From assembly GCA_035084275.1 (NCBI GenBank), contig CM068775.1:1302001-1366000 (forward strand): a DNA stretch of 64,000 nucleotides, written 5' to 3'. A program made the position numbers and the translations under genes. The notes beneath the pieces are model-generated. The model had not been told where the DNA came from, ran no database searches, and was given only the letters and a program-made list of their open reading frames with translations. Shown piece by piece: positions 364 through 59,934 of the stretch (position 1 is the first letter of the stretch; every line of letters begins with the position of its first letter). Source of the stretch: Hydrolagus colliei (Eukaryota).

Positions 364-675
364 GTGTCCAGGCCGATGTGGTGCTGACACAGCCGTCGTC
401 TCTAACCGGGAAGCCTGGCCAGGCCCTGAGACTCACCTGTAGAACCAGCGGGTTTGATCTCAGCAAATATGGCATGAACTGGGTCTGGCAGGTTCCTGGG
501 AAGTGGCTGGAATGGCTGCTCTACATTTCGTACACATCTGCGTCCAACAGTCGTTACACACCTGACATTCAAAGCCGTGTCACTGTTAACAGTAATAATT
601 CCAATAACATCATCGATCTGAACATCAAAAGTCCAACAGTTCACAACACCGCCATCTCTTACTGTGCAAGTGACT
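364..675 (+). pseudogene. IGHV: IgH variable segment V1 (IgM-like VH exon); leader exon absent from the window
   Basis: Acceptor TTCTTTACAG at 354-363; open frame [25 protein letters not shown]...[16 protein letters not shown]...TAISYCASD with both Ig cysteines and the conserved Trp; followed by a 23-bp-spacer RSS. Confidence 0.92.
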
Positions 676-714
676 CGCAGTGAGAGGCAACTGGGCTGGT
701 CTCCTACAAATACA
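676..714 (+). promoter_or_regulatory. V1 recombination signal (23-RSS) with variant heptamer
   Basis: CGCAGTG (676-682) + 23 nt + ACAAATACA (706-714); consensus is CACAGTG-23-ACAAAAACC. Confidence 0.85.
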
Positions 715-916
715 CGAGGGGAGGAAAGGCAGCCCCTCCCACCCTAAACTGAAGGGCAGTTATGGTGTCAATGCTGTGTCTGTAGCAAAGATTAAAGGAA
801 AAGCTTAGAATGGATTCCTTATCATTCCAAACCAATACAGTGAACGGTGGTTTGATGGGGGGTGAATGAGCTGCTTATTTGTGCTGTAATATTCTGTGAT
901 TTCAGCTGGTATGTGA

Positions 917-982
917 CACTGTGCTGTTTGAGGCGGGAAGCATTGCGATTGGAGACTGACTAGATGACAGTTCACAAATATC
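917..982 (+). other. Candidate degenerate IgH D1 segment (unit 1)
   Basis: CACTGTG (917-923), 17-nt CTGTTTGAGGCGGGAAG, CATTGCG (941-947; CACTGCG in unit 4), then ACAAATATC after a 26-nt spacer. No convincing 5' nonamer. The position matches D1 of chondrichthyan V-D1-D2-J clusters. Confidence 0.4.
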
Positions 983-1124
983 CTCTTATTACCAGCCGTT
1001 GGACATATTTGTTTTCTGTTTCTGTGGCTGTGAAGAAAGTGTTAGACAGACGCTGTGCCATGCCACAGGAAAATAGTCCATTTCAGTGAATGTTGGCAGC
1101 CAGTATAGAGCAGACACTGAGGTC

Positions 1125-1191
1125 AGTATGTGTATGGGACTGTGTCACTGTGTATACGGGGCTCACAGCATTAACTGTCAATACAAAAACC
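1125..1191 (+). other. IgH D segment (D2) flanked by 12/12 RSSs (unit 1)
   Basis: AGTATGTGT-12-CACTGTG (1125-1152), coding TATACGGGGCT (1153-1163), CACAGCA-12-ACAAAAACC (1164-1191; perfect nonamer). Confidence 0.9.
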
Positions 1192-1529
1192 CTTGAACAC
1201 CAAACCAGATAATCTCTCCCACTGCTGGCGTGTGTGGGTCCCAATTAACGTGAGGAGATTTGATATGTTTATAATGGGGCCTAACACTGAGGATTTTACC
1301 AGATTTTAATTGACATAAAAACATAAAATATAATCTTGAATCTGTTGGTGACAAGTGAAGGTGTTTGACGGGAACATTGCAAACTGGCAAAGATACAAAC
1401 ATTTAACAGCTAAACACAGAGCTGTGCAATTGTTTTCAGAACATTACAGAACTATACGGTTCCGGTATTTAGTTTGGGGAAATCACCATTTACAATAATA
1501 TGGTGTTTGTGTGGCCGGCCCTCACAGCA

Positions 1530-1616
1530 GGTTATTGCAGTGATCAGCACACTGACTGTAGCACTGTGACTACCTTGACTGCTGGGGACAAGGCACCATG
1601 GTGACAGTGACTAACG
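1530..1616 (+). other. IGHJ: IgH J segment J1 with 23-RSS
   Basis: GGTTATTGC-23-CACTGTG (1530-1568); coding 1569-1616 reads YLDCWGQGTMVTVTN (WGxG motif); phase-1 donor G|GTAAG. Confidence 0.95.
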
Positions 1617-25276: not shown

Positions 25277-25614
25277 ATGAGGTCCCTGATATCTCTCAGT
25301 CTGTTGCTGGCTCTCTTCTCCCGTGAGTTCTATTATTGGGACAAGTCTGACTGTGTGTGTGTGTGGGTGTGATTCTCTCTGCAATGTCACAGAGCCGGGA
25401 TATCTCACAATAATTAATCTTCGGTCATTTGTTCTTTACAGGTGTCCAGGCCGATGTGGTGCTGACACAGCCGTCGTCTCTAACCGGGAATCCTGGCCAG
25501 GCCCTGAGACTCACCTGTAGAACCAGCGGGTTTGATCTCAGCAAATATGGCATGAACTGGGTCTGGCAGGTTCCTGGGAAGGGGCTGGAGTGGCTGCTCT
25601 ACATTTCGTACACA
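25277..25614 (+). pseudogene. IGHV: IgH V2: intact leader exon + V exon truncated at the start of CDR2
   Basis: Leader 25277-25322 (MRSLISLSLLLALFS, phase-1 donor); V exon from 25442 matches V1/V3 up to TACACA at 25614, then switches to an antisense SINE head. No RSS, D or J follows. Confidence 0.9.
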
Positions 25615-25901: not shown

Positions 25902-26629
25902 NNNNNNNNNNNNNNNNNNNNNNNNNNNNNNNNNNNNNNNNNNNNNNNNNNNNNNNNNNNNNNNNNNNNNNNNNNNNNNNNNNNNNNNNNNNNNNNNNNN
26001 NNNNNNNNNNNNNNNNNNNNNNNNNNNNNNNNNNNNNNNNNNNNNNNNNNNNNNNNNNNNNNNNNNNNNNNNNNNNNNNNNNNNNNNNNNNNNNNNNNNN
26101 NNNNNNNNNNNNNNNNNNNNNNNNNNNNNNNNNNNNNNNNNNNNNNNNNNNNNNNNNNNNNNNNNNNNNNNNNNNNNNNNNNNNNNNNNNNNNNNNNNNN
26201 NNNNNNNNNNNNNNNNNNNNNNNNNNNNNNNNNNNNNNNNNNNNNNNNNNNNNNNNNNNNNNNNNNNNNNNNNNNNNNNNNNNNNNNNNNNNNNNNNNNN
26301 NNNNNNNNNNNNNNNNNNNNNNNNNNNNNNNNNNNNNNNNNNNNNNNNNNNNNNNNNNNNNNNNNNNNNNNNNNNNNNNNNNNNNNNNNNNNNNNNNNNN
26401 NNNNNNNNNNNNNNNNNNNNNNNNNNNNNNNNNNNNNNNNNNNNNNNNNNNNNNNNNNNNNNNNNNNNNNNNNNNNNNNNNNNNNNNNNNNNNNNNNNNN
26501 NNNNNNNNNNNNNNNNNNNNNNNNNNNNNNNNNNNNNNNNNNNNNNNNNNNNNNNNNNNNNNNNNNNNNNNNNNNNNNNNNNNNNNNNNNNNNNNNNNNN
26601 NNNNNNNNNNNNNNNNNNNNNNNNNNNNN
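25902..26629. other. Assembly gap (728 N)
   Basis: Run of N. Confidence 1.
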
Positions 26630-31600: not shown

Positions 31601-31976
31601 AGTCCGCAGGAGGCTTCGGGGTCAGAGAAATGCTGAGAAAACAATTGATCCCGAGTTGGAAAACCGAAGAAAATCCATAATTTTACTGTTCGCCATATCA
31701 GGCAGTTTTATAGTTTTGTGGACAACTTATGTTGTACATTCCGTCATATGGCAACTTTCCAATTTTGATTATAGCGAAACATTGGTCAATAGCACCCCAT
31801 ATATTGTCCAAGATACCGGATTCATGCTGCAAATGTTGAATTGCTGTGCAAACACCTGTATATATGCTTTAACTCAGAGTAAGTTCAGAGAGGAGTTTAA
31901 GAAAGGGTTCATTTATCCCTTTCATATCATTGCGAATCTAATGATAAAACAGCAGGAGAAAACGGTAGGAAAGTAA
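28608..31976 (+). CDS. GPR139-like class A GPCR, copy B (two exons, 333 aa, intact)
   Basis: Exon 1 28608-28677 (MEFPTVYAIAAIYYPILVAFAIP, G|GT donor); exon 2 31045-31976 (AG|TT AAT TTG); 1002 nt open; seven hydrophobic segments, D2.50 (ATDLL), C3.25, FDRF, WYC in ECL2, NTCIY. Family assignment from recalled similarity, not a database search. Confidence 0.88.
29140..30790 (-). mobile_element. Decayed L2 pieces and a short ERV gag-like piece in GPCR-B intron
   Basis: DHITPTLARLH and ERTRLKSGL motifs; paralogous to 39010-40660. Confidence 0.7.
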
Positions 31977-38491: not shown

Positions 38492-41400
38492 ATGGAATTT
38501 CCAACAGTGTACGCTATAGCAGCTATTTACTACCCCATTCTGGTAGCATTTGCAATTCCGGGTAATTCTATTTATTTTCATGGTATGGCAATTGTGAAGA
38601 GACTAGTTCAATTGGCATTTTGTATAGTGGCTTATCATGTCTTCTAGAAATCTCAAATTAGTTCAAAGAATATACGGCAAAGTGAAATGACTTTGTATTT
38701 GTGGGCGAAAGGCGAGAGCTAAATGTGTGTTTCCGTGTCCTACAAACTATCATGGATTGAAATGATCAATTTTATTAACTGTTGATGATGGATTATTACC
38801 AATGGTGGAGTGAGGAAACTTGCTGAAGGTTAGCCCTGACCTGCCTGGAATTGAACACAGATGCATCGCTTGGTGAATGCTCTAATCACTCAGCTACAGG
38901 ACTCGGTTACAGAAATGGGGATAACCAGGGCTATGAATCTGAATGTACAACTTGATCTGAGAGCTGGTGCAGACTCAAAGAGTCAAAAGATCTCTGTTCT
39001 CTTGGAAATATATGTGACAAAATTACATTTATAGAGCGCCTTTCACATTGGGAGGATGTCCCAAGGTGCCGAACAGTCAGGTCGGGACCCAAGTAAGGGA
39101 GTGGGGCAGGGTATGGGGTTGGGCTTTCGAGAGTTAGGAGGGGAGGGCAGCAGATGGCATGGTAGAAGAGGACGAGCCTTGAATACCGGCATTGAAGGAA
39201 ACAAGGGAGGGATCCAGATGCAGGGAAAGTTGGATGGACTTCCAGAGTGTGGGGACAGAGATATTGAAAGCCCATGCACCGTTTGTAGGGCGGGTCGGGT
39301 AGGGGACATGGAGCAGACTGGAGCCCACTGAATAGGGCGGTCTGGTAGTTTCATAAGCGGACAGAAGGTCGAAGAGATAGGAGGGGGCAAGGCCATGAAT
39401 GGCCTTGGAAGTGAGGAGGAGAATCTTTAATTTTATCCTCTGGGGATGTTGAGGCAATGGAGCCGGGCAAGGGTGGGAGTGATGTGGTCACAGAACTTTG
39501 TGCTGGAGAGGAAATGAGCTGCAAGTTCTGGATGTTCTGCAGACTGTGAAAGGAAGAGCCAGAACCAACAGTGAGGAGGGAGTTTCCATATTCGTGCCTT
39601 GATGTGATGAATGTGTGGACAATGGGTTTGGTAACCTGATGGTTGAGGCAGTGCTGCCATCTGGCAATGTTGCAGTGGTGTTGATGTGGGGGAGGGAGGA
39701 CAATTAAGGGTAGAACAAGACACCCAGGTCCCTGACTGACTTCAAGAGATGGAGAGTGCAGCCTTGGAAGCCGATGTTGCCAGTGCCTGAGTTGTGGAGT
39801 TGCTGACCTGATCCAATCAGGAGGATATAGGTGCATTACATCATGGGAAGATTTCATGATATGATAGTGGCTGTTATGAAGAGGACGGGAACAATCCGGA
39901 TGAAAGGGACAGGTTGACTGTGTCGGCAAGTGGTAGGGTAAGGAGGCAGAGCTGGGTGGTAAGGAGTCGAGTCGGGATGGGATTCAGGGAGCAGGTGGTG
40001 GACTTCATGGAAGATATGTTTGTGATGACAGAGGATGGGGAGACAGGTTCTCCCCATCCTCATCTATTCTGAATGTGGTGAACTAGGGTAAATGAATAAA
40101 GGAATCAATGAATCAATCAACCAAAACTTACATTGATATCACGCCTTTCACGTCAAGAGGATGGCCCAAGGCACTGTACAGTTTGAAAGGGGCAAGAGCA
40201 TGGGGGGAGGGATCCGGGCAAGATGAACACGAGTAGGAAAATTAACTGTATATTTGTGGGCAAAACACAGCTGGCAAATTGCACAGAGCAGGGATAGGTA
40301 GATGTTGGGGTGTGGGAGGGTGGAGTGTGGGGGCAGAAGTTGGAAGTGTGATGGCAGCTAAGCGGATTCCCTCGATTTTGGTCTCAAGGTCTTCCAGCAT
40401 CTCCTCACAGTGGGAGTTGGAGGAGAGAATTTGAGAGGTGGACGGGGAAGGGCGGAGGAGCTGATTTGTTGTGGAGAATAGGAATTTGTGTTTGTCCTGG
40501 ATTATCCTGGAGTAGAAGTAAGATTTGCTGGAGACCAGAGCGGGGAGGTAGTTTTTGATGCGGCAGATACGCTAGTGGACCATTAGACCAGATTTGAGAC
40601 AGGTACGTTCAGTGCCCGACAACTGATCTTTGAGTAACTGGAGGTGGCTAATGAACTAGGGTGAGGTTCAAGAGTAACACTTTGGAAAGAATCAGGAGAA
40701 ATAATTTTGCTGATTGTTTAATGCAGGCTACCTTACAACAAGGCCACAATTTGAACCTGTATGAAAGGTTTGCTAAAGGTTTGAGATATGGACAATGTTC
40801 TCAAGGAATTGAATCAACTCAAAGGATAAGCAACCAAAAAGCTCCTCATCTCACAACTGTATTAACGTGAATAATTCGTCCTATTTTCTTACTTTCGCTC
40901 AGTTAATTTGCTGGCGATTGTGATCCTGTCCAGAGGAAACTGTGGTCTCTCAAAATGCATCACTTGCTATCTGGTGGCCATGGCAGCCACGGATCTCCTG
41001 GTTGTATTTGTGGATGTGTTGTTAAACAAAATTAACAATCTGTATTTCCCATTAAGTTTCTTATTCTACACTCCAGTGTGTAGTGTTAGACTTGTGTTGC
41101 TGGTTGCAGCATTTCTCATGTCTTTGTGGTTCACTGCTGCTTTCACTTTTGACCGATTTGTTGCCATTTGCTGCCAAAAGCTGAAGCCAACATATTGCAC
41201 GGAGAGAACGGCCACAGTGGTTATTGTAACTCTGTGTGTTATTTGCTGCTCAGTCAGCATTCCCTGTTACTTTTCATTTGTTCCTCAGTTGATAATTAAC
41301 AATACCCCGTGGTACTCTGTCTTCAAACCAAACATTTATACTTTGCTCACCTGGAAATTATACGAAAGGTTTATCCGTGTTTTTAATCCACTGTTTGTGT

Positions 41401-41834
41401 TTGCTTTGATTTGCCTGTTCAACGCTGTGATTATCAGAAACATTCTGATGGCCAGTAAAGTCCGCAGGAGGCTTCGGGGTCAGAGAAATGCTGAGAAAAC
41501 AATTGATCCCGAGTTGGAAAACCGAAGAAAATCCATAATTTTACTGTTCGCCATATCAGGCTGTTTTATTGTTTTGTGGACAACTTATGTTGTACATTCT
41601 GTCATATGGCAACTTTCCAATTATAATTATAGCGAAACATTGGTCAATAACACTCCATATATTGTCCAAGAAACCGGATTCATGGTGCAAATGTTGAATT
41701 GCTGTGCAAACACCTGTATATGTGCTTTAACTCAGACTATGTTCAGAGAGGAGTTTAAAAAAGGGTTCATTTATCCCTTTCATATCATTGCAAAATTAAT
41801 GATAAAACAGCAGGAAAAAACGGTAGGAAAGTAA
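38492..41834 (+). CDS. GPR139-like class A GPCR, copy C (two exons, 333 aa, open frame with two conserved residues lost)
   Basis: Exon 1 38492-38561; exon 2 40903-41834; WYC>WYS (TCT 41316-41318) and NTCIY>NTCIC (TGT 41721-41723). Confidence 0.82.
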
Positions 41835-41839
41835 TTTGT

Positions 41840-44800
41840 GACAAACGCGGTTCAACTTCACCTACATTGGTGACTATTTTCACAAACAGGGAAACTTTCC
41901 AACATGACTGTAAGCTCTGTAGGTAATGTAATAAATTAGTGTATCAATTTCATTAACAATAGATATTTGAGGTATGTGATTGGTCGTTCGCTTCTGTTGG
42001 CAGCTGGTACGAATGTAGTTTTGTTGTTGTTGTTGTGACCGGCTTCACAATGATGGGAGCTGGTTGTGACCGGCTTTGCAGAAGAGACAACAAACTGGTT
42101 AAAGTTGACAAACCGTTTCCCAGGCCTTATCTGTGTGTTTCCCATGGAGAGGTGGTCTGCAGGTGGAGAGACAGCTGAGCAACATTTAGTTTTGTAGAGG
42201 AATCCTCTTGCAGAAGAAACTGGGTGAAAATATCACCTGATGAACATAAAAGGGGGGATCGAAGAAAGGAAGATAGTGGAAAGTGGAGTCGCCATTGCAG
42301 CTTCTGAAGAAGGAACAGTTAAGACTAAGTCAGACCATCGATGTTGTGACAGCATGTCTGTCCGACATTGAGTCCTGGACGAGGGACAACTTCCTCCAAT
42401 TGAACATGAGCAAGACCAAGGCCCTGCTGATTGGCTCAAGCCAGCGCTTCCACACATCGGGCGCTGCCAGCCTCAACATCCAAGGCTGTACTCTCCACCT
42501 CACAAAGCCAGTCAGGAACCTCGGCATCACATTCGACCATAAACTCTCCTTCCTCCCCCACATCCGTGCCTTGACCGGCACCGCTTTTTTCCACCTGCGC
42601 AACATTTGCCAGGCTCCGCAACTACCTCACCCCCCACGCTGCCGAAACATTCATGCCCGCGTACATCACCTCATGGTTGGACTACGGAAATTTTCGCATC
42701 GTCGTCCTCTCCAGCTCCACCATTCACAGGCTGCAGGTCATCCAAAACTCTGCAGCCCGTGTACTATCCCACACCCACCTCCGTGACCACATAACCCCCA
42801 CCCTCGCCCATCTCCACAGTCTCCCCATCCCCCAGAGGATTGACTTCAAGATCCTTGTCCTCGTTTTCAAGGACTTACACGGCCTTGCCCTGCCCATTTT
42901 ATCAGATTTACTCTCCCCCTATAAGCCCACCCAGACCCTCCGTTCAGCAGGACTTGATTTACTCCAAGCCCCCCGCCCGAACCGCCCCCCATCAGAGGCC
43001 AGGCCTTCAGTTTCTCCGCTCTCACTCCATGGAATTCCATCCACCAATCCCTCCACCTTGTTACCTCCATTTCCTCTTTCAAGGCCGGTTTGAAGACTCT
43101 CCTTTTCGACCATGCCTTCTGTTCCCCCCTAATTATTCGACTTCCCCCACGTTTTCTACCGCCTCCCGAACACTCCCCTCCCCTCCCAGCTCGGGTCACA
43201 CACCTCCTGTGCAGCGCCTTGGGACGTCCTCCTGACGTAAAAGGCATTCTATAAGTCTAATTTGTTGTTGTTGTTGTTAAGTCTTAGAAAACTGTCAACA
43301 CCTTTGCTGATGCTCCCAAACTATGTAACAGTGCTTCTGTACTGGGATATTGTTTTGCTGATTGAAAGGGCTGCTGTGCCTGAATACCTTTTGGTGGACA
43401 TTAAATTAAACATAAATTGGACATTATTCCTCCATCTCTTTGGCAACATTGGTTTGTTCAACTTAAATCCTTGTGAGCTGTAGCATTTTTACGGAAGCAT
43501 TTTTGTGATGTATATTTTTAATTAGTTATAAATATTACTAAGCTGAATTCACATTCATGTTTTTCTGTGCAACACTTGTGTCATTCTGTATTTCACCAGG
43601 ACATCACAGGATGAAATAACCCTTACATTATGAGGAGATATCAATGATGTACTGTTTCCTTCCAAATGTAGTAACAGTGACAACAAGATTAAATTGATAG
43701 AGTGTCTTTCATGTCGGAAGGACGTCCCACGGCACTGATCAGTCAGCATTCGGGAACCAAGCACAGGGGAAAAGTGGAATAGAGGCAAGAGGAGGCAGAG
43801 AATTGGGAGCACAGCTGGAGTTACAGAGTGTGGGATGGGTGAGACAGGGTGGCTGCAGTCGGACATCTGGCGGCATCTGCCATGGTGTGCGCAATGGAGA
43901 ATTTGAAGAGTGGGTCAGAGGAAGGCTGTGGAAAGGTCAAGCAATAATAGTAATCAGAGCAGTTGGAGTGAGAGGAGTGGTGATTGGGAATAATGGAGTG
44001 TGGGGGACAGGGACAAGAGCATTTTGGGGAAGCAGTGCTATGACTAGGATCAGACAGTGTTGGGGGTTTGGAGAGAGGTGGGCGTTGGTTGTCAGTGAGG
44101 CAGGGTTTACCCTCTGGGCTGGTGTGGATCATAACGGCTGTTTTCTCAGTGAGTCCAGGGCTGGGAAATTCTAATGACATGCGCGGCATGACATCACATG
44201 GCTGTTGGTTTCTGGTTGGTTGAGGCCTCAGTGATTCAGTGATTGTGGTGATGGTGCTTCAGACCAGCTGAGGGTGAGTCCCTGGTCATCTCCGCGGCAT
44301 CAGGCCTCGCGTTGGTTCTTGTGGCCATTGAGGTTGAAATCCACAATGATAAAGTAACCAAAGCCTCAGGACAGCCTGGCCACTGATCCCCCTCACCTGT
44401 GAGCCGCTCCAGGCACTGGATGTGATAATGATTCGGCTGCTGCTCGACTGTGACCAAGGAATTATATACCACATGAGGCTGTAGATGATCAATCCTTGTA
44501 TCTATTGAAGACTGAGATTGATAGATTTGTAAAGGAGAGAGGCATTTTGGGATATCAGAATTGGATTCGCAAATGGAACTGAGTTAGAAGATCTTCTATG
44601 ATCTTATTAAGTAGCTGAACAAGCTTGAGGGGCTGAATGGCCTACACCTGCTCTTATTTCTTATGTTATTATGTTCATGTTTGGTATTTTTTGCTGAAGT
44701 TGCACCTGCACCAAGCTCCATGACCACATCACCTCGCCCGTCTATCATCCCCTAGAGGATCTAAATCAAGTTCCTCGTCTTCACTTTCAAGGCAATTCAT

Positions 44801-47800
44801 GGACTTTCCCCTCCTATCATTTTGACATACTGTCCCACGATGAACCTGCCCACCACTACATTAAGTGGGCTCCAGCCTGCTCCATATCCCTCACCCAACA
44901 TGCCCTACCATCAGTGGCTGGGCTTAAAGCGTCTCTGCCCCCTCTCTCTGGGACTCCATCGCAGATTCCCTTCACCTCGCTCCCTCTCTCGCTTCCTTCA
45001 ATGCTGGTGTCAAGAGTCTCCTCTTTGAATGTGCCTTCTTTTCCTCGCCCAACTCTCTCCCTCCTTTCTCATCTCTCTTTTGTCCCTCCGAACTCTCTCC
45101 ACTCCTTCCCCCTACATTGCCCCTCTTCCCGGCTCAGGTCCTGACCTGACTGTTCAGCCCCTTGGGACGTCCTCCCGATATGAAATGTTCTCTATAATGT
45201 CACTTTGTTGTTGTGGTGGCCGCCCAGTAAAAGTGTGTCTGTGACACCGGGCATCACAGAGCACATACTGTGGGCACACACTGCAGTTACACCTGGTGGC
45301 CACACCCGCTGACTGTGGCGCTGTGGCGTCCTGCACAGAGAAATCTCAACAGTGACAACAACAACAAAATGACATGTTTAAAGCACAGAGTCCTCCCACA
45401 GGAGCCCTCCCAATGGTCATTGTGTATCAAGACTGAGATTGATAGATTTGTAAAGGAGAGAGGAATTCGGACACAATGGGCTGAATGGCCTCCTCCAGTG
45501 CTGTATAATTCCATGATTGAACACATTTTATCTATTAATTTTACTTTTTATTCTACCATTACTGATTTACCAATCACAGCCACTTCAGATGACCTGACAG
45601 CTGCTGTTGATGTTGTTGCTGTTGGAGTGAAGGGAAATAAAGTATGAAAGGTCAGGCTGTGGGCTCTGTGGTGTGAGGGCAGGAAGCTGATCACTGATTG
45701 ACTGCAGACAATCACAGCTGCTTCCTGACAATTGTGCTGTGAGTTTCTGTCCCACCTGAAGGCAGCTTGACTCATCCTGTGTCTTTCCAGCAAAAAGTCT
45801 TTAGATACAAACAGCAGCATCTTGTGTAGGGTTTTGCAAATGAGCTGATCTGCAACGTAAACATCTGTTCTATAACATCTGCAAATTATCATTTCCTGTA
45901 AACTCAAAGTCAGAAAAATAAGGCTAAACATCAAAGAAATAAGTGACACAGGACTATCCATAGTTCTGTTCATTGATCAGGAAATCCAGCCTCTCTTATT
46001 GATTGTTTTTTGTAATAATACTACAGAAACGTTTTTATTTATCAAAGCCGGAATATTTTGTGAGGTGACCATGGAGCTGTTCTGTGTCTTGTTGTCTATG
46101 AGCCATGAGTAACAAAAATACTCGGATTAGATATAGTGCTTTTCACATCTTCTAAACTGTGTCTCAAAGCGTTTCACAGAATATACTGCAAAGTGGATTG
46201 ACTCTATAGTTGTTGGCGAAACACGGCAGCTAATTGCACAAAGCAATGTCCTGGATTGAAACGACCAAATTGTTATAGGTTTCTTGGGATGCATTATTAT
46301 TCAACATGTGGAGTAAGGAAACTTGCCCTAGGCATCGCCCTGCATGGAATTGAAACAGAAGTCTCACGGTTGACAGTCGAGGGCTCCAACCATTGAGTTA
46401 CAGGACTCCTCTGTGATCACAATTTTCCTGTCATGTGGGATTGATGTTGTGCTCACAGGTTTGCTGTAAGATAGGAGGCCTTGTAGATCTTGTACAGTTT
46501 CCAGATCCAGTGCCCAAAGGAGAATTCAAGATTCAGCGGTGGATCCTCATGTCTCAAAGTTGAATCCTGTATCTCAGGGGTTAGAGCACTCACCTCGCAA
46601 GCCAGAGACTAGGGTTTGATACCTGGCAGGACAAAGCCTTGAGCAAGTTTCCTTACACCCCACTTCTGATAATAAGCAATCAAGATAATAAAATAATAAT
46701 AAATGACTGAAACCACTTCTGATACAAGCCTCATGTTATTTCTTCCCAGTTTCCTTCTCCCCCTTGTCCTGAAGGAGTGTGACTGGTCTGACATTACACT
46801 GGGCTCCCACTGCACCAGCAGCCCTCCCCACCTGGCTTCTCACCCCAAGAGAACATTTCATGTCTGGCTTGAAATCATGAGCCGCCACATCAAACCGTTC
46901 ACCACCATTGCACTATTTCATAACCAATCAAGCTTGTGATTACAGTAAATGCAGCGACTGAGAACAGAGAGGATTATTATTATAAGTGGACTGAAGGCTG
47001 AATTCATTCCCATTATCTTCCAATCCGGAGATAATTATTGTGGCCACGTTTGACATCGACACTGACAATAAGATAGACTTCCTCAAATGTAAGAGAACAG
47101 AGAGGAAAGTAGGAGTAAGGACACATCGACAAGTGATAAAATAGAAAAAAAGAGATTAAAATTGCCAGGAACATAATTTAATATCAATGTATCCACATCA
47201 AAATGCCAGTTGAAGTATCAAGAGGATTCATGCCTTCATGCCCATATGTGATGTGAAATCAGGATTGAAAGAGCAGGAAACAGGGAGTAATCATCTGCAG
47301 TTGATCAGAACATCACTAAACTATAGGAAATAATAAACATTTTAATTAAGGCACAATGTTAATTATTGCACATAAAATAAACAGTTACTACACTTTATAA
47401 TGCATTTTGTGAAGTTCCTTTAGACATTTCAATAACATGAAAAGGAATTATGTCAAATGCAAGGTTTATGATCAAAAAGATTATTATGTAAACTTAAGAA
47501 AATAACAATTGCAGCACAAAAGACACAGGTCCATCTGGATTGCCTTCCACAATCCTGGCCGCCACACATACTTGTCATCTCCTCAACAATATACTGTATC
47601 ACAAAATATTATTTTCAAAAGTAACCCAGGGATTCTATTTTTTTCTGCTGCCACTGTTTCCCTAACTTTAACAGTCACTCACTGAAATAGGGTTCCCGTA
47701 GGTTTTGTTGAACTTACCAATTACTCCACTCACTCTCACACACACACACACACACACACACATTAAAGGAAACAATTCATGAGGCTTCAGGGTCAGTGCT

Positions 47801-48068: not shown

Positions 48069-48549
48069 ATGAGGTCCCTGATATCTCTCAGTCTGTTGCT
48101 GGCTCTCTTCTCCCGTGAGCTGTATTATTGGGACAAGTCTGACTGTGTGTGTGTGTGTGGGGGTGTGATTCTCTCTGCAATGTCACAGAGCCGGGATATC
48201 TCACAATAATTAATCTTCGGTCATTTGTTCTTTACAGGTGTCCAGGCCGATGTGGTGCTGACACAGCCATCGTCTCTAACCGGGAAGCCTGGCCAGGCCC
48301 TGAGACTCACCTGTAGAACCAGCGGGTTTGATCTCAGCAAATATGGCATGAACTGGGTCTGGCAGGTTCTTGGGAAGGGGCTGGAATGGCTGCTCTATAT
48401 TTCGTACACATCTGCGTCCAACAGTCGTTACACACCTGGCATTCAAAGCCGTGTCACTGTTAACAGTAATAATTCCAATAACATCATCGATCTGAACATC
48501 AAAAGCCCAACAGTTCACAACACCGCCATCTCTTACTGTGCAAGTGACT
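48069..48549 (+). CDS. IGHV: IgH V3: leader exon + complete V exon (open frame)
   Basis: Leader 48069-48114; intron GT..AG; V exon 48238-48549 (312 nt) [22 protein letters not shown]...[14 protein letters not shown]...TAISYCASD. Confidence 0.93.
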
Positions 48550-48588
48550 CGCAGTGAGAGGCAACTGGGCTGGTCTCCTACAAATACA
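48550..48588 (+). promoter_or_regulatory. V3 23-RSS with variant heptamer
   Basis: CGCAGTG-23-ACAAATACA. Confidence 0.85.
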
Positions 48589-48790: not shown

Positions 48791-48856
48791 CACTGTGCTG
48801 TTTGAGGCGGGAAGCACTGCGATTGGAGACTGACTAGATGACAGTTCACAAATATC
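48791..48856 (+). other. Candidate degenerate D1 segment (unit 4)
   Basis: CACTGTG (48791-48797) + CTGTTTGAGGCGGGAAG + CACTGCG (48815-48821); spacer to ACAAATATC is 26 nt. Confidence 0.4.
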
Positions 48857-48998: not shown

Positions 48999-49065
48999 AG
49001 TATGTGTATGGGACTGTGTCACTGTGTATACGGGGCTCACAGCATTAACTGTCAATACAAAAACC
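48999..49065 (+). other. IgH D2 segment with 12/12 RSSs (unit 4)
   Basis: AGTATGTGT-12-CACTGTG, TATACGGGGCT (49027-49037), CACAGCA-12-ACAAAAACC. Confidence 0.9.
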
Positions 49066-49404: not shown

Positions 49405-49491
49405 GGTTATTGCAGTGATCAGCACACTGACTGTAGCACTGTGACTACCTTGACTGCTGGGGACAAGGCACCATGGTGACAGTGACTAACG
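49405..49491 (+). other. IGHJ: IgH J3 with 23-RSS
   Basis: GGTTATTGC-23-CACTGTG (49405-49443); coding 49444-49491 YLDCWGQGTMVTVTN; donor G|GTAAG. Confidence 0.95.
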
Positions 49492-51142: not shown

Positions 51143-53167
51143 ATGGAATTTCCAACACTATACGCTATAGTAGCTATTTACTACCCCATTCTGGTAGCAT
51201 TTGGAATTCCGGGTAATTCTATTTGTTTTCATGGTCTGGCAATTGTGAAGAGACTAGTTCAATTGAACTTTTGTATAGTGGCTTGTCATGTCTACTCGAA
51301 ATCTCAAATCAGTTCAAAGAATATACGGCAAAGTCAAATGACTTTGTGTTTGTGGGCGAAAGGCGAGAGCTAATTGTGTATTTCTGTGCCCTACAAACTT
51401 TCATGGACCAAACGTCTGGTCCGTTATTTCCCGCCAAGCCGGAGTATTCAATCCACGCTGATCGAAACCTGTCATCATACTGGCAGACAGACTTGATACT
51501 TTCTTGATGGCAGGCGGATATTTTATTCCAATCAATTTGAGCTGGACCTTGGTTGCAAAGCCAGGTTTGGACAGCCGTCCATCCTGCTTCCAAGTTCCCA
51601 CCATCAGGTCCCATTGCCACAGTTACTTGTTTTTGCAGCAAACGCGCATCTCAACCCGTGGCCATCATAGACAATATTTGGACCCTGTCTTGAGGGTGTA
51701 AGCGGTAGATCATATGCAAATGATTGAGCTGCTCCCAAATTTTTATGGCACCTTTCCGGGGATCAGATAGTGATTTGGACCAATTGTCGATCTTTTCTGG
51801 ATCGGCTGGAGCATGGATCGACACCAGTATATCCCGAAAAGCCCCGGGTACTGTGACATTAGCTTGTCGACCTCGATGCACCGCTGTCACTTGTGGCACA
51901 CGTGGGGGAGGGAGGACAGTTGAGGGTAAAACAAGACACCCTGGTTCCTGACTGACTTCGAGAGTTGGAGAGTGCAGTGTTGTGATTTCCGATCCCGAGA
52001 ATACAAAACAATGATCCAACAATTCTTAATAAAGGTATAGAGATTTAATAATTATAAACAATTTTAAAATGATAGAATAAAAGATTCATACTACCAGTCC
52101 CATTTAGAATACAATGCAGGATTCAGGCTGTTACACCATATGTCAGGTTCAGGCTTCTCACAATACTCACTCCTTCTGACTTTCCATCTCTAACTGACCC
52201 TTCTCTGCCTGTAAAACAAAACAACTGGAACCATGATCCGCTCCAGTAGATCTGGACAACAGTGACAGGCTGGAGATCTCGGTTTACCCTGAGACACTCC
52301 CTAACTGTTGTGATGAGCCACTCTTTCTCTCCTACCTCATTCTCCACCATAACTAAGTCAGCCAGTTGATCACTTGGAAATTGTCCAGAAGCGATGTCAA
52401 AACCAGACTATCTAAAGGCCAGAGTTGTACGGAGTTGTTTGCCTCCCTTCTTTTCCCAGACCTTGAGATGGCTCTCCTGCTACTCACTTGGCAATTGCCC
52501 AAATGAGTACAATTCTTTGTGCCTTTGTTAATTGAGTCCTCTGTCCCTATCTATATCTTGAGCTGTTCTCCTTCAATTCTTTATTTATCACAGAAGCTAC
52601 TGATGTTATTGTGCCCCTTGGATTATTGGCATGGACCAGTATCCAAGATTGTCTCAGCGCAGGGGAATGTGCACCTGGTGTTTTGGGTAGACAAGTTGTT
52701 TCTCTCCCTTTTGCTCAAGGTTGCTGACCATGCCTGTTTTGTGGATAGATGGTTTTAATTGGTGCCTGATTCGAACTAACTATAATTAATTTTTAATACA
52801 GTACCTCCATATCCCAACAGCAGCCTTGAATGCCGATGCTGCCAGTGCCTGTGTTGTGGAGTTGCTGACATGAGTTAATCAGGTGGATATTCAACTAGGT
52901 GCATGGGAAGATTTCTTAAGGATTGGGATGATAGTTGCTGTTATGAAGGAGACGGGAATGATGCCGAATAAAAGGGACAGGTTGACTGTATCAGCAAGTA
53001 GTAGGGTAAGGTGGTGGAGCTCTGAGGTAAAGAGACGAGTTGGGATGGGATGCAGGGAGTGGACTTCATGGAGGATACGGTTGTGATGACAGAGGATGGG
53101 GAAACATGTTCTCCCCATCCTCATCCATTCTGAAGTTGTAGAAGTAAGTCAATCGACCGACCGACCG

Positions 53168-53210
<43 letters not shown>

Positions 53211-54931
53211 CTTACAGTTATATATTGCCTTTCATGTCAAGAGGATGGCCCAAGGCACTCTACAGTTTGGTAGGGACAAGAGCATTTGGGGGAGGGGCCG
53301 GGTCAGGATGAAGAAGAATAGCAAAATTAACTATATTTGTGGGCAAAATGTGACAGCCAAATTATGCCCAGGATGGATGGGTAGATGATGGGGTGTGGGA
53401 GGGTGGTGTGTGGGGGCAGAAGTTGGAAGGGTGTTGACAGCTAAGTGGATTCCCTTGATTTTGGTCTCGAGATCATCCAGCATCTCCACACAGTGGGAGT
53501 TGTAGGAGAGGATCTGTGATATGGACGGGGAAGGGTGGAGGAGCTGGTTTGTTGAGGAGAACAGGAACTTGTGGTTGTCCTGGATTATCCTGGAGTAGAA
53601 GTATGATTTGCTGGAGACCAGAGCAGAGAGGTAGTTTTTGGTGTGCCAGATATGCCAGTGGACCATTAGACCAGATTTGAGCCAGGTACGTTCAGCGCCC
53701 GTCACCTGATCTTTGAGGAACTGGAGGTGGCTGGTGAACTAGGGTGAGGTTCGAGAGTAACACTTTGGAAAGAATCAGGAGAAATCATTTTGCTGATTGT
53801 TTAATGCAGGCTACCTTACAACAAGGCCACAATTCAAAACCGTATGAAAGGTTTGCTGAAGGTTTGAGATATGGACAATTTTCTAAAGTAATTGAATCAA
53901 CTCAAAGAATAAACAACCAAATATGACACACCCTTAAACTCCTCATCTCACACCTATATTCATGTGAATAATTTTTCCTATTTTCTTTCCTACACACAGT
54001 TAATTTGCTGGCGATTGTGATCCTGTCAAGAGGAAACTGTGGCCTCTCAATGTGCGTCACTCGCTATCTGGTGGCCATGGCAGCCGCGGATCTCCTGGTT
54101 GTCCTCGTGGATGTGTTGTTAAACCAAATTAACAATCTGTATTTCCCATTAAATTTCTTATTCTACACTCCAGTGTGTAGTGTTAGAGTGGTGTTGATGA
54201 GTGCAGCATTGCTCATGTCTTTGTGGTTCACTGTTGCTTTCAGTTTTGACCGATTTATCGCCATTTGCTGCCAAAAGCTGAAACCAACATATTGCACGGA
54301 GAGAACGGCCACAGTGGTTACTGTAACTCTGTCTGTTTGTTGCTGCGCAGTCAGCATTCCTTGTTACTTTATATTTGATCCTCAGTTCACAGTTAACAAT
54401 ACCCCGTGGTACTGTATCTTCAAACCAAACATTTATACTTTGCTCACCTGGAAATTATACGAAAGGTTTATCCGTGTTTTTAATCCACTGTTTGTGTTTG
54501 CTTTGATTTGCCTGTTCAATGCTGTGATTATCAGACACATTCTGATGGCCAGTAAAGTCCGCAGGAGGCTTCGGGGTCAGAGAAAAGCTGAGAAAACAAT
54601 TGATCCCGAGTTGGAAAACCGAAGAAAATCCATAATTTTACTGTTCGCCATATCAGGCACTTTTATAATTTTGTGGATAACATATGTTCTACATGCCCTC
54701 ATATGGCAACTTTCCAATTTTAATTATAGCGAAACATTGGTCAATAACACCCGATATATTGTCCAAGAATCTGGACTCATGGTGCAAAAGTTGAATTGCT
54801 GTACAAACACCTGTATATATGCATTAACTCAGAAAAAGTTCAAAGAGGAGTTTAAGAAAGGGTTAGTTTATCCCTTTGATATCATTGCTAAATTAATTAT
54901 AAAATACCAGAAAAAATCATTAGGAAAGTAA
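51143..54931 (+). CDS. GPR139-like class A GPCR, copy D (two exons, 333 aa, intact)
   Basis: Exon 1 51143-51212 (MEFPTLYAIVAIYYPILVAFGIP); exon 2 54000-54931; ADLL, TPVC, FDRF, WYC and NTCIY all retained. Confidence 0.9.
51400..51977 (-). mobile_element. ERV gag capsid fragment (frameshifted)
   Basis: ...EKIDNWSKSLSDPRKG...IYRLHPQDRVQIL and IDWNKISACHQESIKSVCQYDDRFRSAW; the latter fits the retroviral major homology region spacing Q-x4-S-V-x2-Y-x2-R (conserved E replaced by K). Confidence 0.6.
51978..52819 (-). mobile_element. Solo LTR, 842 bp, 4-bp TSD
   Basis: Minus-strand termini TGTTGGGA...TCACAACA; TSD GCAG at 51974-51977 and 52820-52823; empty site GAGAGTGCAGCCTTG in the copy C intron. 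Confidence 0.88.
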
Positions 54932-55642: not shown

Positions 55643-55852
55643 GGTTCGATAGTCCGAACACACAAATTTCCTATACCCAGGGCATTTACCGTGGGTATCA
55701 CTCAATAGTCCGAACCGACAATGAAATAAGGTTATTAATCCGAACATTTGCATCCTTAGGTTTAGGGTTAGGGTTAGAGTTAGGGTTAAGCGAAGCTTCG
55801 GACTAACGAACCTTCGGATTAATGAATCTTTCGGACTATCGAGCTATAACCC
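55643..55852. mobile_element. Short inverted-repeat element (MITE-like) containing (TTAGGG)n
   Basis: GGTTCGATAGTCCGAA (55643-55658) versus TTCGGACTATCGAGC (55830-55844) inverted; internal TTAGGG repeats at about 55756-55788. Confidence 0.65.
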
Positions 55853-55859
55853 ACAGATT

Positions 55860-56340
55860 CATATCTACCCAGGCCCACAAACACTCACACTCACCCAGAT
55901 CCACACACACTAACATACACACACATCCACCCAGGCGTGGACACACTCCCACAGTCTCAGACACTCTCATCCACCCAGACCTACACACTGATTCACACAC
56001 ACATTCACACACACCCATATCCACCCATGCTCACCCAGGCCCACGAGCTTCACATACTCGCACACACTCACAATAACACAGATCCACACATAGTCACTCA
56101 CACTCACCCAAGCCCACTCACTAACACACACTCAAAATCACCCAACCCCCACCGCCACACACTCATAATCACGCAGGCCACAAACACACAAACTCACAGA
56201 CATTCACAATCACCAGGGCTCACACACCATCACAATCACCCAGATACCACCTCCCTCCCCCCCCACCACACACACTGTCACTTAGGCCCACACACTCAGT
56301 ATCATCCAGGCCCTCACACACACTCACACTAAACTGATCA
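55860..56340. repeat. CA-rich low-complexity tract
   Basis: Degenerate (CA)n/(CACT)n sequence. Confidence 0.85.
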
Positions 56341-57460: not shown

Positions 57461-57777
57461 CCCTTGCTCTACCTGCAGAGTCTCAATGGAAGGATTTCCG
57501 TGCTCTGTAATTCCACAGAGTTCACTTTTCCCAATGCATTGGATACAACGATTTGTTGGGAACAAACACACAAATGATTAAATCAATCTCTTCTTTATTT
57601 CTCTTAATAGTAAAAGCTTGGAAGAATTGGCAGGAGGTTCTGTGTAGTTCAATAGAGGGAAGGGAGCCCGTGAACAACTGGGAAACTTTATATACATTAA
57701 TAATCAAACAGGGAAAAGAAGAAAAGTCTCAGGTTTCAATCTCCTCTGAATATATTTCTTATCCTTTATCCTCACAG

Positions 57778-57908
57778 ATTTCCCAACCGAGATGATGCTG
57801 TAAGGTTTCCCACCAGATGAAAGTGGCAACCTCTGGCCTACTGCTTCCACCTTCATCATCCTCTTCTTCCTGAGTATGTTCTACAGCGCCACCATCACTC
57901 TAATTAAG
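57778..57908 (+). CDS. IGHM: IgM-type transmembrane exon TM1
   Basis: Reads (D)[42 protein letters not shown], then donor AAG|GTGAGG. Matches the conserved IgM CART motif (WxTASTFIxLFxLSxFYSxxxTLxK). In-frame TAA at 57801-57803; second phase-1 acceptor CCACCAG| at 57816 bypasses it. Confidence 0.92.
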
Positions 57909-58159
57909 GTGAGGAGAGTAAATTCATTGATGCCATGAGGTGATAGAACAGCTGCTGTTAAATACTTGTTCATGGCAACACTGATAGTGATGCTCATTAC
58001 AGCCACTGTGCTGGGAAACTCTATCTGTCCTTACAGGGCAGGATCCTTGTGACTGAGCTGTGTGAAGGTGAAGGACATATCCTATCACCCTTACACACCC
58101 AATCACACCTGACATATACTCACCTGGTATAGACAAGGATGGAGGAGATGGGGTCACGG

Positions 58160-59630
58160 AATTTGGAATGGTCTAGGACACGGGCAGCGGAATTCTGGAT
58201 TATCTGTGGAGGGAGAAATTGAGAAGGCCGACCAGCAAGGCGTTTGCATAATCGAGCCGGGATGTAATGGAGGCGTGGATGAGGGTTTCAGTGGCTTTGG
58301 GGGTTAGGCATTGGCTGGGTGATCATGAGTTGGGCAATGTTCCAGAGATGGAGAAAGGCAGAGCTGGTCATTGCTTCAATGTGGGGGAGGAAATACCGTT
58401 GAAGGTTGAACAAGACACCTAGGTTCCTGACATGCTTGGTGAAGTTGAGTGTGCAAACATGGAGGTTGATACTGCCATTGGCTGAAGGAAGGAGGCGCTG
58501 GTGTGAGCCAATCAGTAGGGCCTCGGATTTGTTGACATTCAACTATGGAAAGTTAGCTCTCATCCAAGACTTGATGTCTGACAGACAGTCTGTCATGACA
58601 GAGGCAGTCCTGGGACATCAACCCATGTCTGTGGTTGATGTCACCAAGTGGGAGCATACAGATGTTGAAAAGTAGGGGGCCAAGGACAGAGCCTGAGGGA
58701 CGTCAAGGGTGACAGTGCAGGCACTGGAAGAGAAGCCGTTGGTGGCAACAAAGTGTAGGCAATGAGAAAGGTAGGAGTTGAACTAGGTGAGGGCAAAGTT
58801 CTTGAGGTTGGGATAAAAGTATTCCAGGAAATTGATTGAGCAGATTGGAAAGAGATTGATTTCTAAAATTGGAATTAAAGGACTGAGTGAATCTACATTG
58901 TCTTTTAGATTCAATTACATCACAGATACTTTAATATAGCTCAATCCTGTAGCTCAGTGGTTAAAGCATTCACCTTACAAGCATGAGACCTGTGTTCAAA
59001 TCCAGGAAGGTCAGAGTTAAACCTTGGACAAATTTCCTTACTCCACACTACAATAACAACAACATAATTACATTTATAGAGCACCTTTCACGTCAGGAGG
59101 ATGTCCCGTGGTGCTGAACAGTCAGGTCGGGACCCGAGCACTGGGGGGGGGAAGTGTCGGGGTAGGGAGAAGGGGAAGGAGAGTAGGAGATGTGGCAGAG
59201 TTAGGAGGGAAGCAGAAGGTACGGTCGAAGAGGAAGGTCTTGAGTCCGGCCTTAAGGAGGAAAGAGAGGAAGTGAGGCAAAGGGATTGTGGGATGGAGTT
59301 CCACAGTGTGGGAGCAGAGAGGCTGAGAGCCCGGCCAGTGATTGGAGGGCGGTTAGGGCGGGATACGGAGCAGGCCAGAGCCTGCTGAGCGGAGGGGACG
59401 GGCGGGCTGATACGGAGACAGTAGGTCGGAGAGATAGGCGGGGGAAAGATCGTGAATGGCCTTGAAAGTGAGGACAAGGATCTTGAATTCGATCCTCTGG
59501 GGGATGGGGAGCCAGTGGCGATGGGCGGGGGTGGGAGTGATGTAGTCGTGGAGGAGCCTGGTGCGGGAGAGTACACGAGCTGCAGAGTTTTGAATGATCT
59601 GCAGCCTGTGAAGGGAGGAGCTAAGAAGGC
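58160..59630 (-). mobile_element. L2 fragments and a SINE head in the TM1-TM2 intron
   Basis: L2 RT C-terminal motifs and 3' tail at about 59050-59110; SINE head 58940-59050 (+). Confidence 0.75.
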
Positions 59631-59925
59631 CTAATAATAATCCCTCAAAAAATACAATGATAAAAATTGGTCATTTCAATCTACAATTGTTTGTGTGTAC
59701 AATTGGCTGTGGCATTTTGCCCACAATTATAGTCAATTTACTTTACGATATATGCTGTGAAGTACTTTGAGACATCTAGAAAAGCGCTAAATCAAATACA
59801 AAGATTATTATCACCAGTTGAACGTGTTTGTGTGTGGATTATTATACACCAATAAAAACAAACTTAAATACTAGCTCGTCACGAAGGCTGAAATTATTGA
59901 TGCTATGCTTACTTCTATTTTCCAG

Positions 59926-59934
59926 GTAAAATGA
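59926..59934 (+). CDS. IGHM: IgM-type exon TM2 (VK-stop)
   Basis: CTTCTATTTTCCAG|GTA AAA TGA; completes the canonical KVK cytoplasmic tail; AATAAA downstream at about 60332 and 60625. Confidence 0.88.
   Translation, partial: VK

What the first reader, a model, noticed from the sequence alone, without database searches (positions are those of the whole stretch)
57778..59934. Orphan IgM membrane exons with no constant domains: possible CH-less V-TM receptor
TM1 and TM2 have good splice sites, a full CART motif and the KVK tail, yet I found no CH exon in the preceding 57 kb. The TM1 acceptors are phase 1 like the J donor, so J3 to 57817 reads ...[18 protein letters not shown]...KVK, a single V domain on an IgM anchor. 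The simpler reading is a remnant of a deleted C-mu.
Basis: partly seen in the sequence, partly recalled or inferred. Interest (0 to 1): 0.7.

Follow-up and report, generated by a model that had tools for sequence, protein, structure and literature searches.

The report
Decayed IgM membrane exons, no constant exons
These are real IgM membrane-anchor exons left behind in a chimaera-like genome after the constant-region exons were lost; the first one carries a premature stop, so this is most likely an ordinary gene relic and not a new kind of receptor.

Summary
TM1 and TM2 are genuine IgM-type membrane exons. Their closest relatives are Callorhinchus milii IgM (75-78% identity over 44-49 residues, tblastn E down to 6e-18). 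No constant-domain exon exists anywhere in the 64 kb by Pfam, tblastn with 48 heavy-chain proteins, or a custom 209-domain C-domain HMM.

The receptor reading fails. The true TM1 exon is 57778-57908. It is 131 nt and phase 1, the same length and acceptor position as in a working bamboo-shark IgM cluster, and it is collinear with C. milii TM1 peptides. Its ninth codon is TAA (57801-57803), where working copies have Glu (GAA in the bamboo shark).

The V-D-D-J cassette upstream is also degraded:
- The V heptamer is CGCAGTG.
- The core VH residues Arg38, Asp86 and Tyr90 are replaced.
- The sister copies are truncated (V1 has no leader; V2 is cut by an insertion).

An intact two-exon GPR139-like receptor gene lies on the same strand between J3 and TM1.

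Best reading: a decayed, C-less remnant of an IgM cluster inside a tandem GPCR array. Low interest.

The parts
57778..57908 (+). Canonical IgM TM1 exon (131 nt, phase 1). From acceptor AG 57776-77 it reads (G)AT.. [43 protein letters not shown]. Donor GTGAGG at 57909.
   Evidence: Same length and acceptor position as TM1 of the working Chiloscyllium cluster (L001 31310-31440). Collinear with C. milii P0030, NKSS|[26 protein letters not shown]....
57801..57803 (+). In-frame TAA at codon 9 of TM1. Chiloscyllium has GAA (Glu) here, and the three C. milii IgM copies that keep this part of the spacer (P0004, P0030, P0033) have Glu.
   Evidence: Translation, DNA alignment A3, peptide comparison.
57815..57816 (+). 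It lies inside the canonical exon, in codons that read G-F-P-P-D-E.
   Evidence: 13/25 pyrimidines upstream against 20/25 for the canonical site. It is the fourth AG counted from the canonical one.
57909..59925 (+). TM1-TM2 intron, 2017 nt. It is inflated by interspersed repeats: a LINE-related fragment at about 58134-58786, and a SINE-like unit (58943-59049 plus 59629-59811) split by a further element at 59047-59631.
   Evidence: Self-BLAST. The same intron is about 135 nt in Chiloscyllium.
59926..59934 (+). TM2: GTA AAA TGA (Val-Lys-stop) after acceptor ttttccAG. With the last Lys of TM1 it completes the KVK tail.
   Evidence: Chiloscyllium TM2 reads GTT AAG TGA.
48069..48114 (+). V3 leader exon (MRSLISLSLLLALFS plus 1 nt), donor GTGAGC.
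   Evidence: The leader matches C. milii VH leaders.
48238..48549 (+). V3 exon: an open VH-type V domain with WVWQ in place of WVRQ and NTAISYCAS in place of DTAIYYCAR.
   Evidence: It is 66-67% identical to the closest C. milii VH.
48550..48588 (+). V3 23-RSS: heptamer CGCAGTG (non-canonical at position 2), 23-nt spacer, nonamer ACAAATACA. V1 is identical here.
   Evidence: no V1/V3 difference in this stretch. Two annotated C. milii V models also end ...DSQ, which fits a heptamer at this position; that it is CACAGTG there is inferred.
48791..48821 (+). Putative D1: 5' heptamer CACTGTG, a short coding stretch and a degenerate 3' heptamer CACTGCG. Uncertain.
   Evidence: Read directly.
49020..49065 (+). 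D2: CACTGTG, TATACGGGGCT, CACAGCA, 12-nt spacer, ACAAAAACC.
   Evidence: Read directly.
49437..49491 (+). J3: heptamer CACTGTG plus coding 49444-49491 (YLDCWGQGTMVTVTN plus 1 nt). Donor GTAAGA at 49492, phase 1.
   Evidence: Close to the Chiloscyllium JH sequence.
51143..54931 (+). Intact two-exon GPR139-like GPCR gene (exon 1 51143-51212, exon 2 54000-54931, 333 aa). It lies between J3 and TM1 on the same strand.
   Evidence: Pfam 7tm_1 E 1.4e-20. Best solved structure is GPR139, E 3.4e-7. ORF and splice sites. AATAAA/ATTAAA hexamers at 55137, 55206 and 55550.
364..1616 (+). Sister cassette V1-D-D-J1 (V exon 364-675, J1 1569-1616), 97.5% identical to the V3 cassette. Homology starts at the leader-intron donor (243), so the leader exon and promoter are missing.
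25277..25614 (+). V2: leader exon (25277-25322) plus the first 173 nt of the V exon (25442-25614). It is then cut by unrelated sequence, with the N gap (25902-26629) close by.

Best explanation
The two exons are the membrane-anchor end of a former IgM heavy-chain cluster (V-D-D-J-Cmu1-4-TM1-TM2) of a holocephalan-like cartilaginous fish. The four Cmu exons are gone and the rest is decaying.

Shown here:
- TM1 is the canonical 131-nt, phase-1 exon, with a nonsense codon at codon 9 (TAA where Chiloscyllium has GAA and C. milii proteins have Glu).
- No C-domain exon is present anywhere in the 64 kb.
- The nearest V-D-D-J cassette has a defective V heptamer and has lost conserved VH core residues.
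- Its two sister copies in the window are truncated.
- The space where Cmu should be is occupied by an intact GPR139-like gene, which belongs to a four-copy tandem array.

Inferred:
- A rearrangement tied to the expansion of the GPCR array removed or displaced the Cmu exons, and the V-D-J cassette was later copied along with the array.
- If a transcript did join J3 to TM1, the spliceosome would use the strong canonical acceptor at 57777. The message would then stop 8 codons later, more than 100 nt before the TM1-TM2 junction, and would be a target for nonsense-mediated decay.

The locus therefore most likely makes no antigen receptor.
For: - TM identity. The closest proteins are C. milii IgM (75-78% identity over 44-49 aa). 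IgD/IgW-type membrane tails match at only 45-55%.
- Canonical exon and stop: [12 protein letters not shown]...; C. milii NKSS|DFPNEMTLEVFQQ..., same length; Chiloscyllium genomic TM1 is 131 nt, the acceptor is conserved, and GAA aligns with TAA.
- No CH exons.
- V decay: heptamer CGCAGTG; Arg to Trp in WVRQ, Asp to Asn and Tyr to Ser in DTAxYYC, at columns where all or nearly all of six comparison VH agree; V1 has no leader; V2 truncated.
- GPCR gene between J3 and TM1. Tandem array.
- Acceptor strength.
Against: - The transmembrane core itself is undamaged. It is 25/28 identical to working C. milii copies and its three changes are conservative. TM2 and all splice sites are intact. So either the decay is recent or some constraint persists.
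- I could not measure dN/dS, because no genomic DNA of a working cluster from the same species was reachable.
- The nonsense codon is a single base and could be a sequencing error or a polymorphism.
- V3 keeps an open reading frame, its leader and its splice sites.
- A transcript-like protein (P0065: leader spliced to V, 101/103 identical to V1) shows that some member of this V subfamily is probably expressed somewhere in the genome.
- No expression data for this locus were available.
Confidence: 0.85

Rival explanations
1. A working CH-less receptor. After V(D)J joining in the V3 cassette, J3 splices to the AG at 57816, giving [22 protein letters not shown]...KVK: one V domain on an IgM anchor that could pair with CD79.
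For: The J3 donor and the 57816 site are both phase 1, and the frame is open from 57804 to the TM1 donor. The TM core and the KVK end are intact. The V3 ORF, leader and splice sites are intact.
Against: - The canonical acceptor 39 nt upstream is stronger and leads to TAA.
- The V heptamer is CGCAGTG. From established RSS work, the first three heptamer bases are nearly indispensable.
- The VH charge-cluster residues are lost.
- The 8.3-kb 'intron' holds an intact same-strand gene followed by polyadenylation-signal hexamers.
- The extracellular spacer would be only 5 residues.
- The fewest CH domains named for a membrane Ig-mu transcript in the review read here is one, the zebrafish VDJ-Cmu1-TM1-TM2 form (PMC5192425).
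Confidence: 0.02
2. An assembly artefact. The Cmu exons exist in the animal but were dropped or misplaced when near-identical repeats (Ig clusters, GPCR units, LINEs) were assembled, so the adjacency of J3, the GPCR gene and TM1 is false.
For: The region is a mosaic of 87-97% identical duplicated blocks and many LINE and SINE-like repeat copies, the kind of sequence where mis-joins happen. One gap already exists in the window.
Against: - There is no N run between J3 and TM1.
- 55.1-58.1 kb is unique within the window, so there is no obvious repeat to collapse across next to TM1.
- The nonsense codon, the degraded V features and the truncated V1 and V2 do not depend on the assembly and already mark the Ig pieces here as relics.
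Confidence: 0.07
3. The Ig pieces are dead as a receptor gene but still do something. For example, the C-less V-D-J cassettes might serve as donors for trans-rearrangement or gene conversion with other Ig or TCR loci, or the TM exons might be used by another upstream exon.
For: A review notes chimeric transcripts joining IgW V to TCR-delta J-C in sharks (PMC5192425). [quoted passage not shown] A V1-like spliced product exists in a public protein set (P0065).
Against: The V RSS heptamer is defective in both full-length copies. No other exon-like ORF with a Pfam match lies between the GPCR gene and TM1. Nothing here ties P0065 to this locus: V1 itself lacks a leader.
Confidence: 0.05

Closest known systems
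Chondrichthyan IgM heavy-chain cluster (V-D1-D2-J-Cmu1-Cmu2-Cmu3-Cmu4-TM1-TM2), for example the Chiloscyllium punctatum cluster on BEZZ01001580.1 (locus L001)
   Same: The layout is the same: a V with a split leader and a 23-RSS, D segments a few hundred bp apart, and a J with a phase-1 donor. TM1 is 131 nt with the same acceptor position, and TM2 encodes Val-Lys-stop. The TM core is highly similar.
   Different: All four Cmu exons are absent, whereas they span about 8 kb in L001. TM1 has TAA where L001 has GAA. The TM1-TM2 intron is 2 kb rather than about 135 nt. A GPCR gene occupies the J-TM1 interval.
Callorhinchus milii IgM heavy chains (UniProt A0A4W3JEY8, A0A4W3GJF4 and others)
   Same: These are the closest TM1 relatives found. 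The TM core [24 protein letters not shown] is nearly identical, the spacer DFP.EM.L has the same length, and the V leader is almost the same.
   Different: The window's V is only 66-67% identical to the closest annotated C. milii VH and lacks their WVRQ and DTAIYYC motifs. The window's spacer carries the stop. Those proteins have Cmu domains.
Ig heavy-chain pseudogenes and partial clusters (three IgM pseudogene clusters in nurse shark; Ig-mu pseudogenes in the duplicated catfish IGH loci)
   Same: These too are non-functional leftovers of duplicated Ig loci that retain recognisable segments (PMC5192425).
   Different: I found no description of a relic that keeps V-D-D-J and TM1-TM2 but lacks every C exon, with an unrelated intact gene in between. 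I did not search that literature exhaustively.
Short membrane IgM isoforms of teleosts (zebrafish VDJ-Cmu1-TM1-TM2; medaka Cmu1-Cmu2-TM)
   Same: These are membrane Ig-mu forms with fewer C domains, made by splicing TM1 to an upstream exon.
   Different: They keep at least Cmu1 and are made from loci with a full set of C exons. Here there is no C exon at all and TM1 is interrupted.

Membership tests
IgM-type membrane exons (TM1/TM2) | TM1 is homologous to Ig-mu TM1, with the conserved polar pattern (TAST...FYS.T.TL) and closer to IgM than to IgD/IgW tails | tested here: met
   67-79% identity to IgM tails of shark, chimaera and tetrapods, against 45-55% to IgD/IgW-type tails.
IgM-type membrane exons (TM1/TM2) | Exon structure: a phase-1 TM1 of about 131 nt, then a tiny TM2 encoding Val-Lys-stop (KVK tail) | tested here: met
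   131 nt in both the window and Chiloscyllium; TM2 reads GTA AAA TGA.
IgM-type membrane exons (TM1/TM2) | Uninterrupted reading frame from the canonical acceptor | tested here: not met
   TAA at 57801-03 is aligned with GAA/Glu of working copies.
IgM-type membrane exons (TM1/TM2) | Preceded by a Cmu4 exon with an internal donor (..KSS G|GT) that splices to TM1 | tested here: not met
   No C-domain exon in the window.
Functional chondrichthyan Ig heavy-chain cluster | V with leader, open frame, canonical 23-RSS and conserved VH core residues | tested here: not met
   V3 has a leader and an open frame. However, its heptamer is CGCAGTG and Arg38, Asp86 and Tyr90 are replaced. V1 has no leader and V2 is truncated.
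Functional chondrichthyan Ig heavy-chain cluster | D segments and a J with RSSs and a phase-1 donor | tested here: inconclusive
   J3 and D2 are recognisable with fair RSSs, although the D2 3' heptamer is CACAGCA. D1 is doubtful. Recombination competence cannot be judged from sequence alone.
Functional chondrichthyan Ig heavy-chain cluster | Constant-region exons downstream of J | tested here: not met
Functional chondrichthyan Ig heavy-chain cluster | Expression and rearrangement in lymphocytes | not testable with these tools
   No RNA or lymphocyte DNA data were available. P0065 shows only that some V of this subfamily is spliced somewhere.
Unprocessed pseudogene / gene relic | Recognisable homology to a working gene together with disabling lesions (lost exons, nonsense codon, defective signals) | tested here: met
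   Cmu exons lost, TAA in TM1, defective V heptamer, truncated sister copies.

The most novel reading that the evidence does not exclude
The V3 cassette can still rearrange despite its CGCAGTG heptamer. J3 is then spliced to the internal AG at 57816, skipping the stop, to give a single V domain sitting directly on an IgM transmembrane anchor. That would be a BCR-like receptor with no constant domain and no light-chain partner.
Probability: 0.02. Interest if true: 0.85.

Novelty: new member of a known kind. Interest (0 to 1): 0.15.

Why it matters
As a relic it matters little. It adds one more decayed piece to the many Ig clusters of cartilaginous fish, and it shows how a tandemly expanding GPCR family can break up an Ig cluster and carry V-D-J cassettes along with it.

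It does have practical value for annotation. Automated pipelines, or readers who see a clean TM core, good splice sites and compatible phases, could call a V-TM gene model here. The nonsense codon and the true acceptor position show why that call would be wrong.

Only if the low-probability receptor reading were true would it bear on how small an antigen receptor can be.

Tried and rejected
- **Word-index protein search.** I padded the TM tail with filler so that full-length heavy chains would pass the length filter. It returned one candidate and no hit (one search was a wrong-coordinates error). The exhaustive HMMER search replaced it.
- **Top two hits (P0001, P0002).** These are long repetitive proteins whose scores come from summing many weak repeats. 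P0026 is of the same kind. All three were discarded.
- **Genomic DNA lookups.** Looking up C. milii IgM P0004 and the window's GPCR by exact protein found nothing on record. I therefore could not compare introns, locate the deletion breakpoints or compute dN/dS for TM1 against working copies from the same species.
- **Weak recurring tblastn hit at 44704-44844 to the end of Cmu3 (E 0.002-0.9).** It falls in a LINE-related repeat present many times in the window and is not supported by the C-domain HMM. Rejected as chance.
- **Ig octamer search upstream of the V copies.** Nothing was found, but nothing was found in the Chiloscyllium control stretch either, so the test is uninformative.
- **ARAGORN on 57-61 kb.** No tRNA-like gene was found, so the SINE-like repeat in the TM1-TM2 intron is defined only by its roughly 13 copies in the window.
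- **J3 spliced into the GPCR gene.** Both the J3 donor and the GPCR exon 2 acceptor are phase 1, but the product would lack half of the receptor's first helix. A join at the AG just before the GPCR start codon is out of frame. Rejected.
- **V1/V3 dN/dS (0.30; 3 synonymous and 3 non-synonymous changes).** Too few changes to mean anything.

Full report
**What is there.** The window is vertebrate DNA with a single N run (25902-26629). At the reported place there is a strong acceptor (tatcctttatcctcacAG, AG at 57776-77), followed by an exon that runs to 57908 and a GTGAGG donor. After a 2017-nt intron comes the acceptor ttttccAG (59924-25) and then GTA AAA TGA at 59926-59934. The open part of the first exon reads [35 protein letters not shown], and with TM2 it ends in KVK.

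**Is it more than chance?** Yes.
- I scored the 35-residue open piece with HMMER against 1.84 billion representative proteins. It gave 27 hits at E<=1e-3.
- Three of these are repetitive-protein artefacts (P0001, P0002, P0026). Every other hit whose sequence I read is the membrane tail of an IgM, IgD or other Ig heavy chain.
- The closest is a Callorhinchus milii protein, A0A4W3JEY8.
- tblastn of C. milii IgM proteins onto the window gives E 1.6e-15 to 6e-18 at 57774-57929.
- IgM tails match at 67-79% identity and IgD/IgW-type tails at 45-55%, so the exons are of the IgM type.

**Are constant exons really missing?** Yes, by three independent scans.
- Pfam on every open stretch of at least 30 aa, on both strands, between 49.2 and 60.2 kb gave only 7tm_1. 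No C1-set or other Ig family appeared.
- tblastn of 48 Ig heavy-chain proteins against the whole window, repeated with word size 2 for 39 of them (mostly C. milii IgM), hit only three V exons, the J segments and TM1.
- A profile built from 209 constant domains of those proteins, run with all filters off on every six-frame piece of at least 15 aa, hit only the three V exons (E 5e-8 to 6e-5). Because V domains are only distant relatives of C domains, these hits serve as a sensitivity control. The next best hit was E 0.08.
- The 728-nt gap is 31 kb upstream of TM1, could hide one exon at most, and does not lie between J3 and TM1.

**Where TM1 really starts.**
- C. milii IgM models read ...NKSS|[32 protein letters not shown]... 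(P0030) and ...NKSS|[27 protein letters not shown]... (P0004).
- From the upstream acceptor the window reads [31 protein letters not shown].... It is collinear with P0030, residue for residue, with the stop at a position that is Glu in the three C. milii copies that keep this part of the spacer.
- I fetched a working IgM cluster of Chiloscyllium punctatum (L001) and mapped its exons. J is at about 10.0 kb, Cmu1 to Cmu4 lie at 20.3-28.2 kb, and TM1 is at 31310-31440 (131 nt, starting (G)AT). TM2 follows about 135 nt later and reads GTT AAG TGA.
- The window's exon 57778-57908 is also 131 nt. In the DNA alignment the acceptor is conserved and the window's TAA (57801-03) lies under the shark's GAA.
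- So 57777 is the canonical acceptor and the exon carries a nonsense codon at codon 9 where Chiloscyllium has GAA.
It has 13/25 upstream pyrimidines against 20/25 for the real site. Counted from the canonical AG, it is the fourth.

**The V-D-J side.**
- V3 has a leader exon (48069-48114), a V exon (48238-48549) and a 23-RSS. The RSS heptamer is CGCAGTG (48550-56).
- It is followed by a doubtful D1, a clear D2 (49020-65, 3' heptamer CACAGCA) and J3 (49444-49491, YLDCWGQGTMVTVTN, phase-1 donor).
- Two annotated C. milii V models also end ...DSQ, which fits a heptamer at the same position.
- The closest annotated C. milii VH are only 66-67% identical.
- Against six comparison VH, the window's V differs at three near-universal core positions where all or nearly all of them agree: WVRQ to WVWQ, DTA to NTA, and YYC to SYC.
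- A second cassette, V1-J1 (364-1616), is 97.5% identical over 2.5 kb and carries the same heptamer. Its homology begins exactly at the leader-intron donor, so it has no leader exon or promoter.
- A third copy, V2, has a leader but only 173 nt of V exon before unrelated sequence and the gap.
- The Ig material in this window is therefore broken or degraded in three places.

**What fills the space.**
- Between J3 and TM1, on the same strand, lies an intact two-exon gene (51143-51212 and 54000-54931, 333 aa). It matches Pfam 7tm_1 (E 1.4e-20), and its closest solved relative is GPR139.
- AATAAA/ATTAAA hexamers follow its stop codon at 55137, 55206 and 55550.
- It is one of four tandem copies. Those at 28.6-32.0 kb and 38.5-41.8 kb are also open. 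The one at 12.3-17.3 kb has a frameshift and a stop.
- The V-D-J cassettes sit 1.7 kb upstream of the first exon of GPCR copy 4 (V3-J3) and, across about 9 kb of mostly LINE-derived sequence, upstream of copy 1 (V1-J1).
- The stretch 55.1-58.1 kb around TM1 is unique in the window.
- The TM1-TM2 intron is swollen by nested repeats.

**Interpretation.** The simplest account is an old IgM cluster that lost its Cmu exons during rearrangements of the expanding GPCR array. Its V-D-J part was then copied with the array, and its membrane exons have begun to decay.

If J3 were transcribed through to TM1, the canonical acceptor would give ...[13 protein letters not shown]-stop. That stop lies more than 100 nt before the last exon junction, so the message would be a candidate for nonsense-mediated decay. 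This step is inferred, not shown.

The intact TM core (25/28 identical to working C. milii copies, with conservative changes) shows only that the loss is not ancient, or that most divergence happened while the gene still worked. I could not test constraint directly because no genomic DNA of a working cluster from the same species was reachable.

**Comparison with what is known.** The anatomy matches a chondrichthyan IgM cluster except for the missing C exons and the stop. Pseudogene Ig clusters are known in nurse shark, and Ig-mu pseudogenes in catfish (PMC5192425). In the review I read, the membrane Ig-mu transcript with the fewest C domains still keeps one (zebrafish VDJ-Cmu1-TM1-TM2). A V-TM receptor would therefore be new, but the evidence here is against it.

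**Verdict.** This is an ordinary relic of low interest. A mis-assembly (about 0.07) and a functional cryptic-splice product (about 0.02) remain as residual possibilities.

Noticed in passing
window 12327-17322, 28608-31976, 38492-41834, 51143-54931 (+): There is a tandem array of four two-exon GPR139-like GPCR genes. Copies 2-4 have open 333-aa frames with conserved splice sites. Copy 1 has a 1-nt insertion in exon 1 and an in-frame stop in exon 2. Pairwise dN/dS is 0.43 (copies 2 vs 3) but 0.85-1.41 against copy 4, so copy 4 is diverging fast at the protein level.
   Followed up: partly
window 243 (V1) and 25614 (V2): V1 is cut off exactly at the leader-intron donor, so it has no leader or promoter. 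V2 keeps its leader but loses the V exon after 173 nt, close to the N gap at 25902-26629.
   Followed up: yes
protein P0065 (metaclust), compared with window 366-674: A public 131-aa protein has the leader already spliced to a V that is 101/103 identical to V1, with an odd internal repeat of the leader. It looks transcript-derived. It cannot come from V1 itself, which has no leader, so further copies of this odd V subfamily probably exist and at least one may be expressed.
   Followed up: partly
window 49492 (J3 donor) and 53998-99 (GPCR exon 2 acceptor): The J3 donor and the GPCR exon 2 acceptor are both phase 1, so a J-to-GPCR splice would stay in frame. However, it would drop the first half of the receptor's first helix. 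Probably coincidence.
   Followed up: partly
window 55850-56329 (+): A CA-rich low-complexity tract lies between the GPCR gene and TM1. It stays open for 160 codons (Thr/His/Pro-rich) and has no Pfam match.
   Followed up: no
window 5804-7834 (-): A LINE fragment has a 677-codon open frame with a strong reverse-transcriptase match (RVT_1, E 4.6e-35). Many older copies of its 3' part are scattered through the window, including inside the TM1-TM2 intron.
   Followed up: partly
window 49456-49458 (J3; same codon in J1): The J segments encode Cys where Chiloscyllium JH has Tyr just before WGQG (YLDCWGQG against YLDYWGQG). This is one more unusual residue in this cassette.
   Followed up: no
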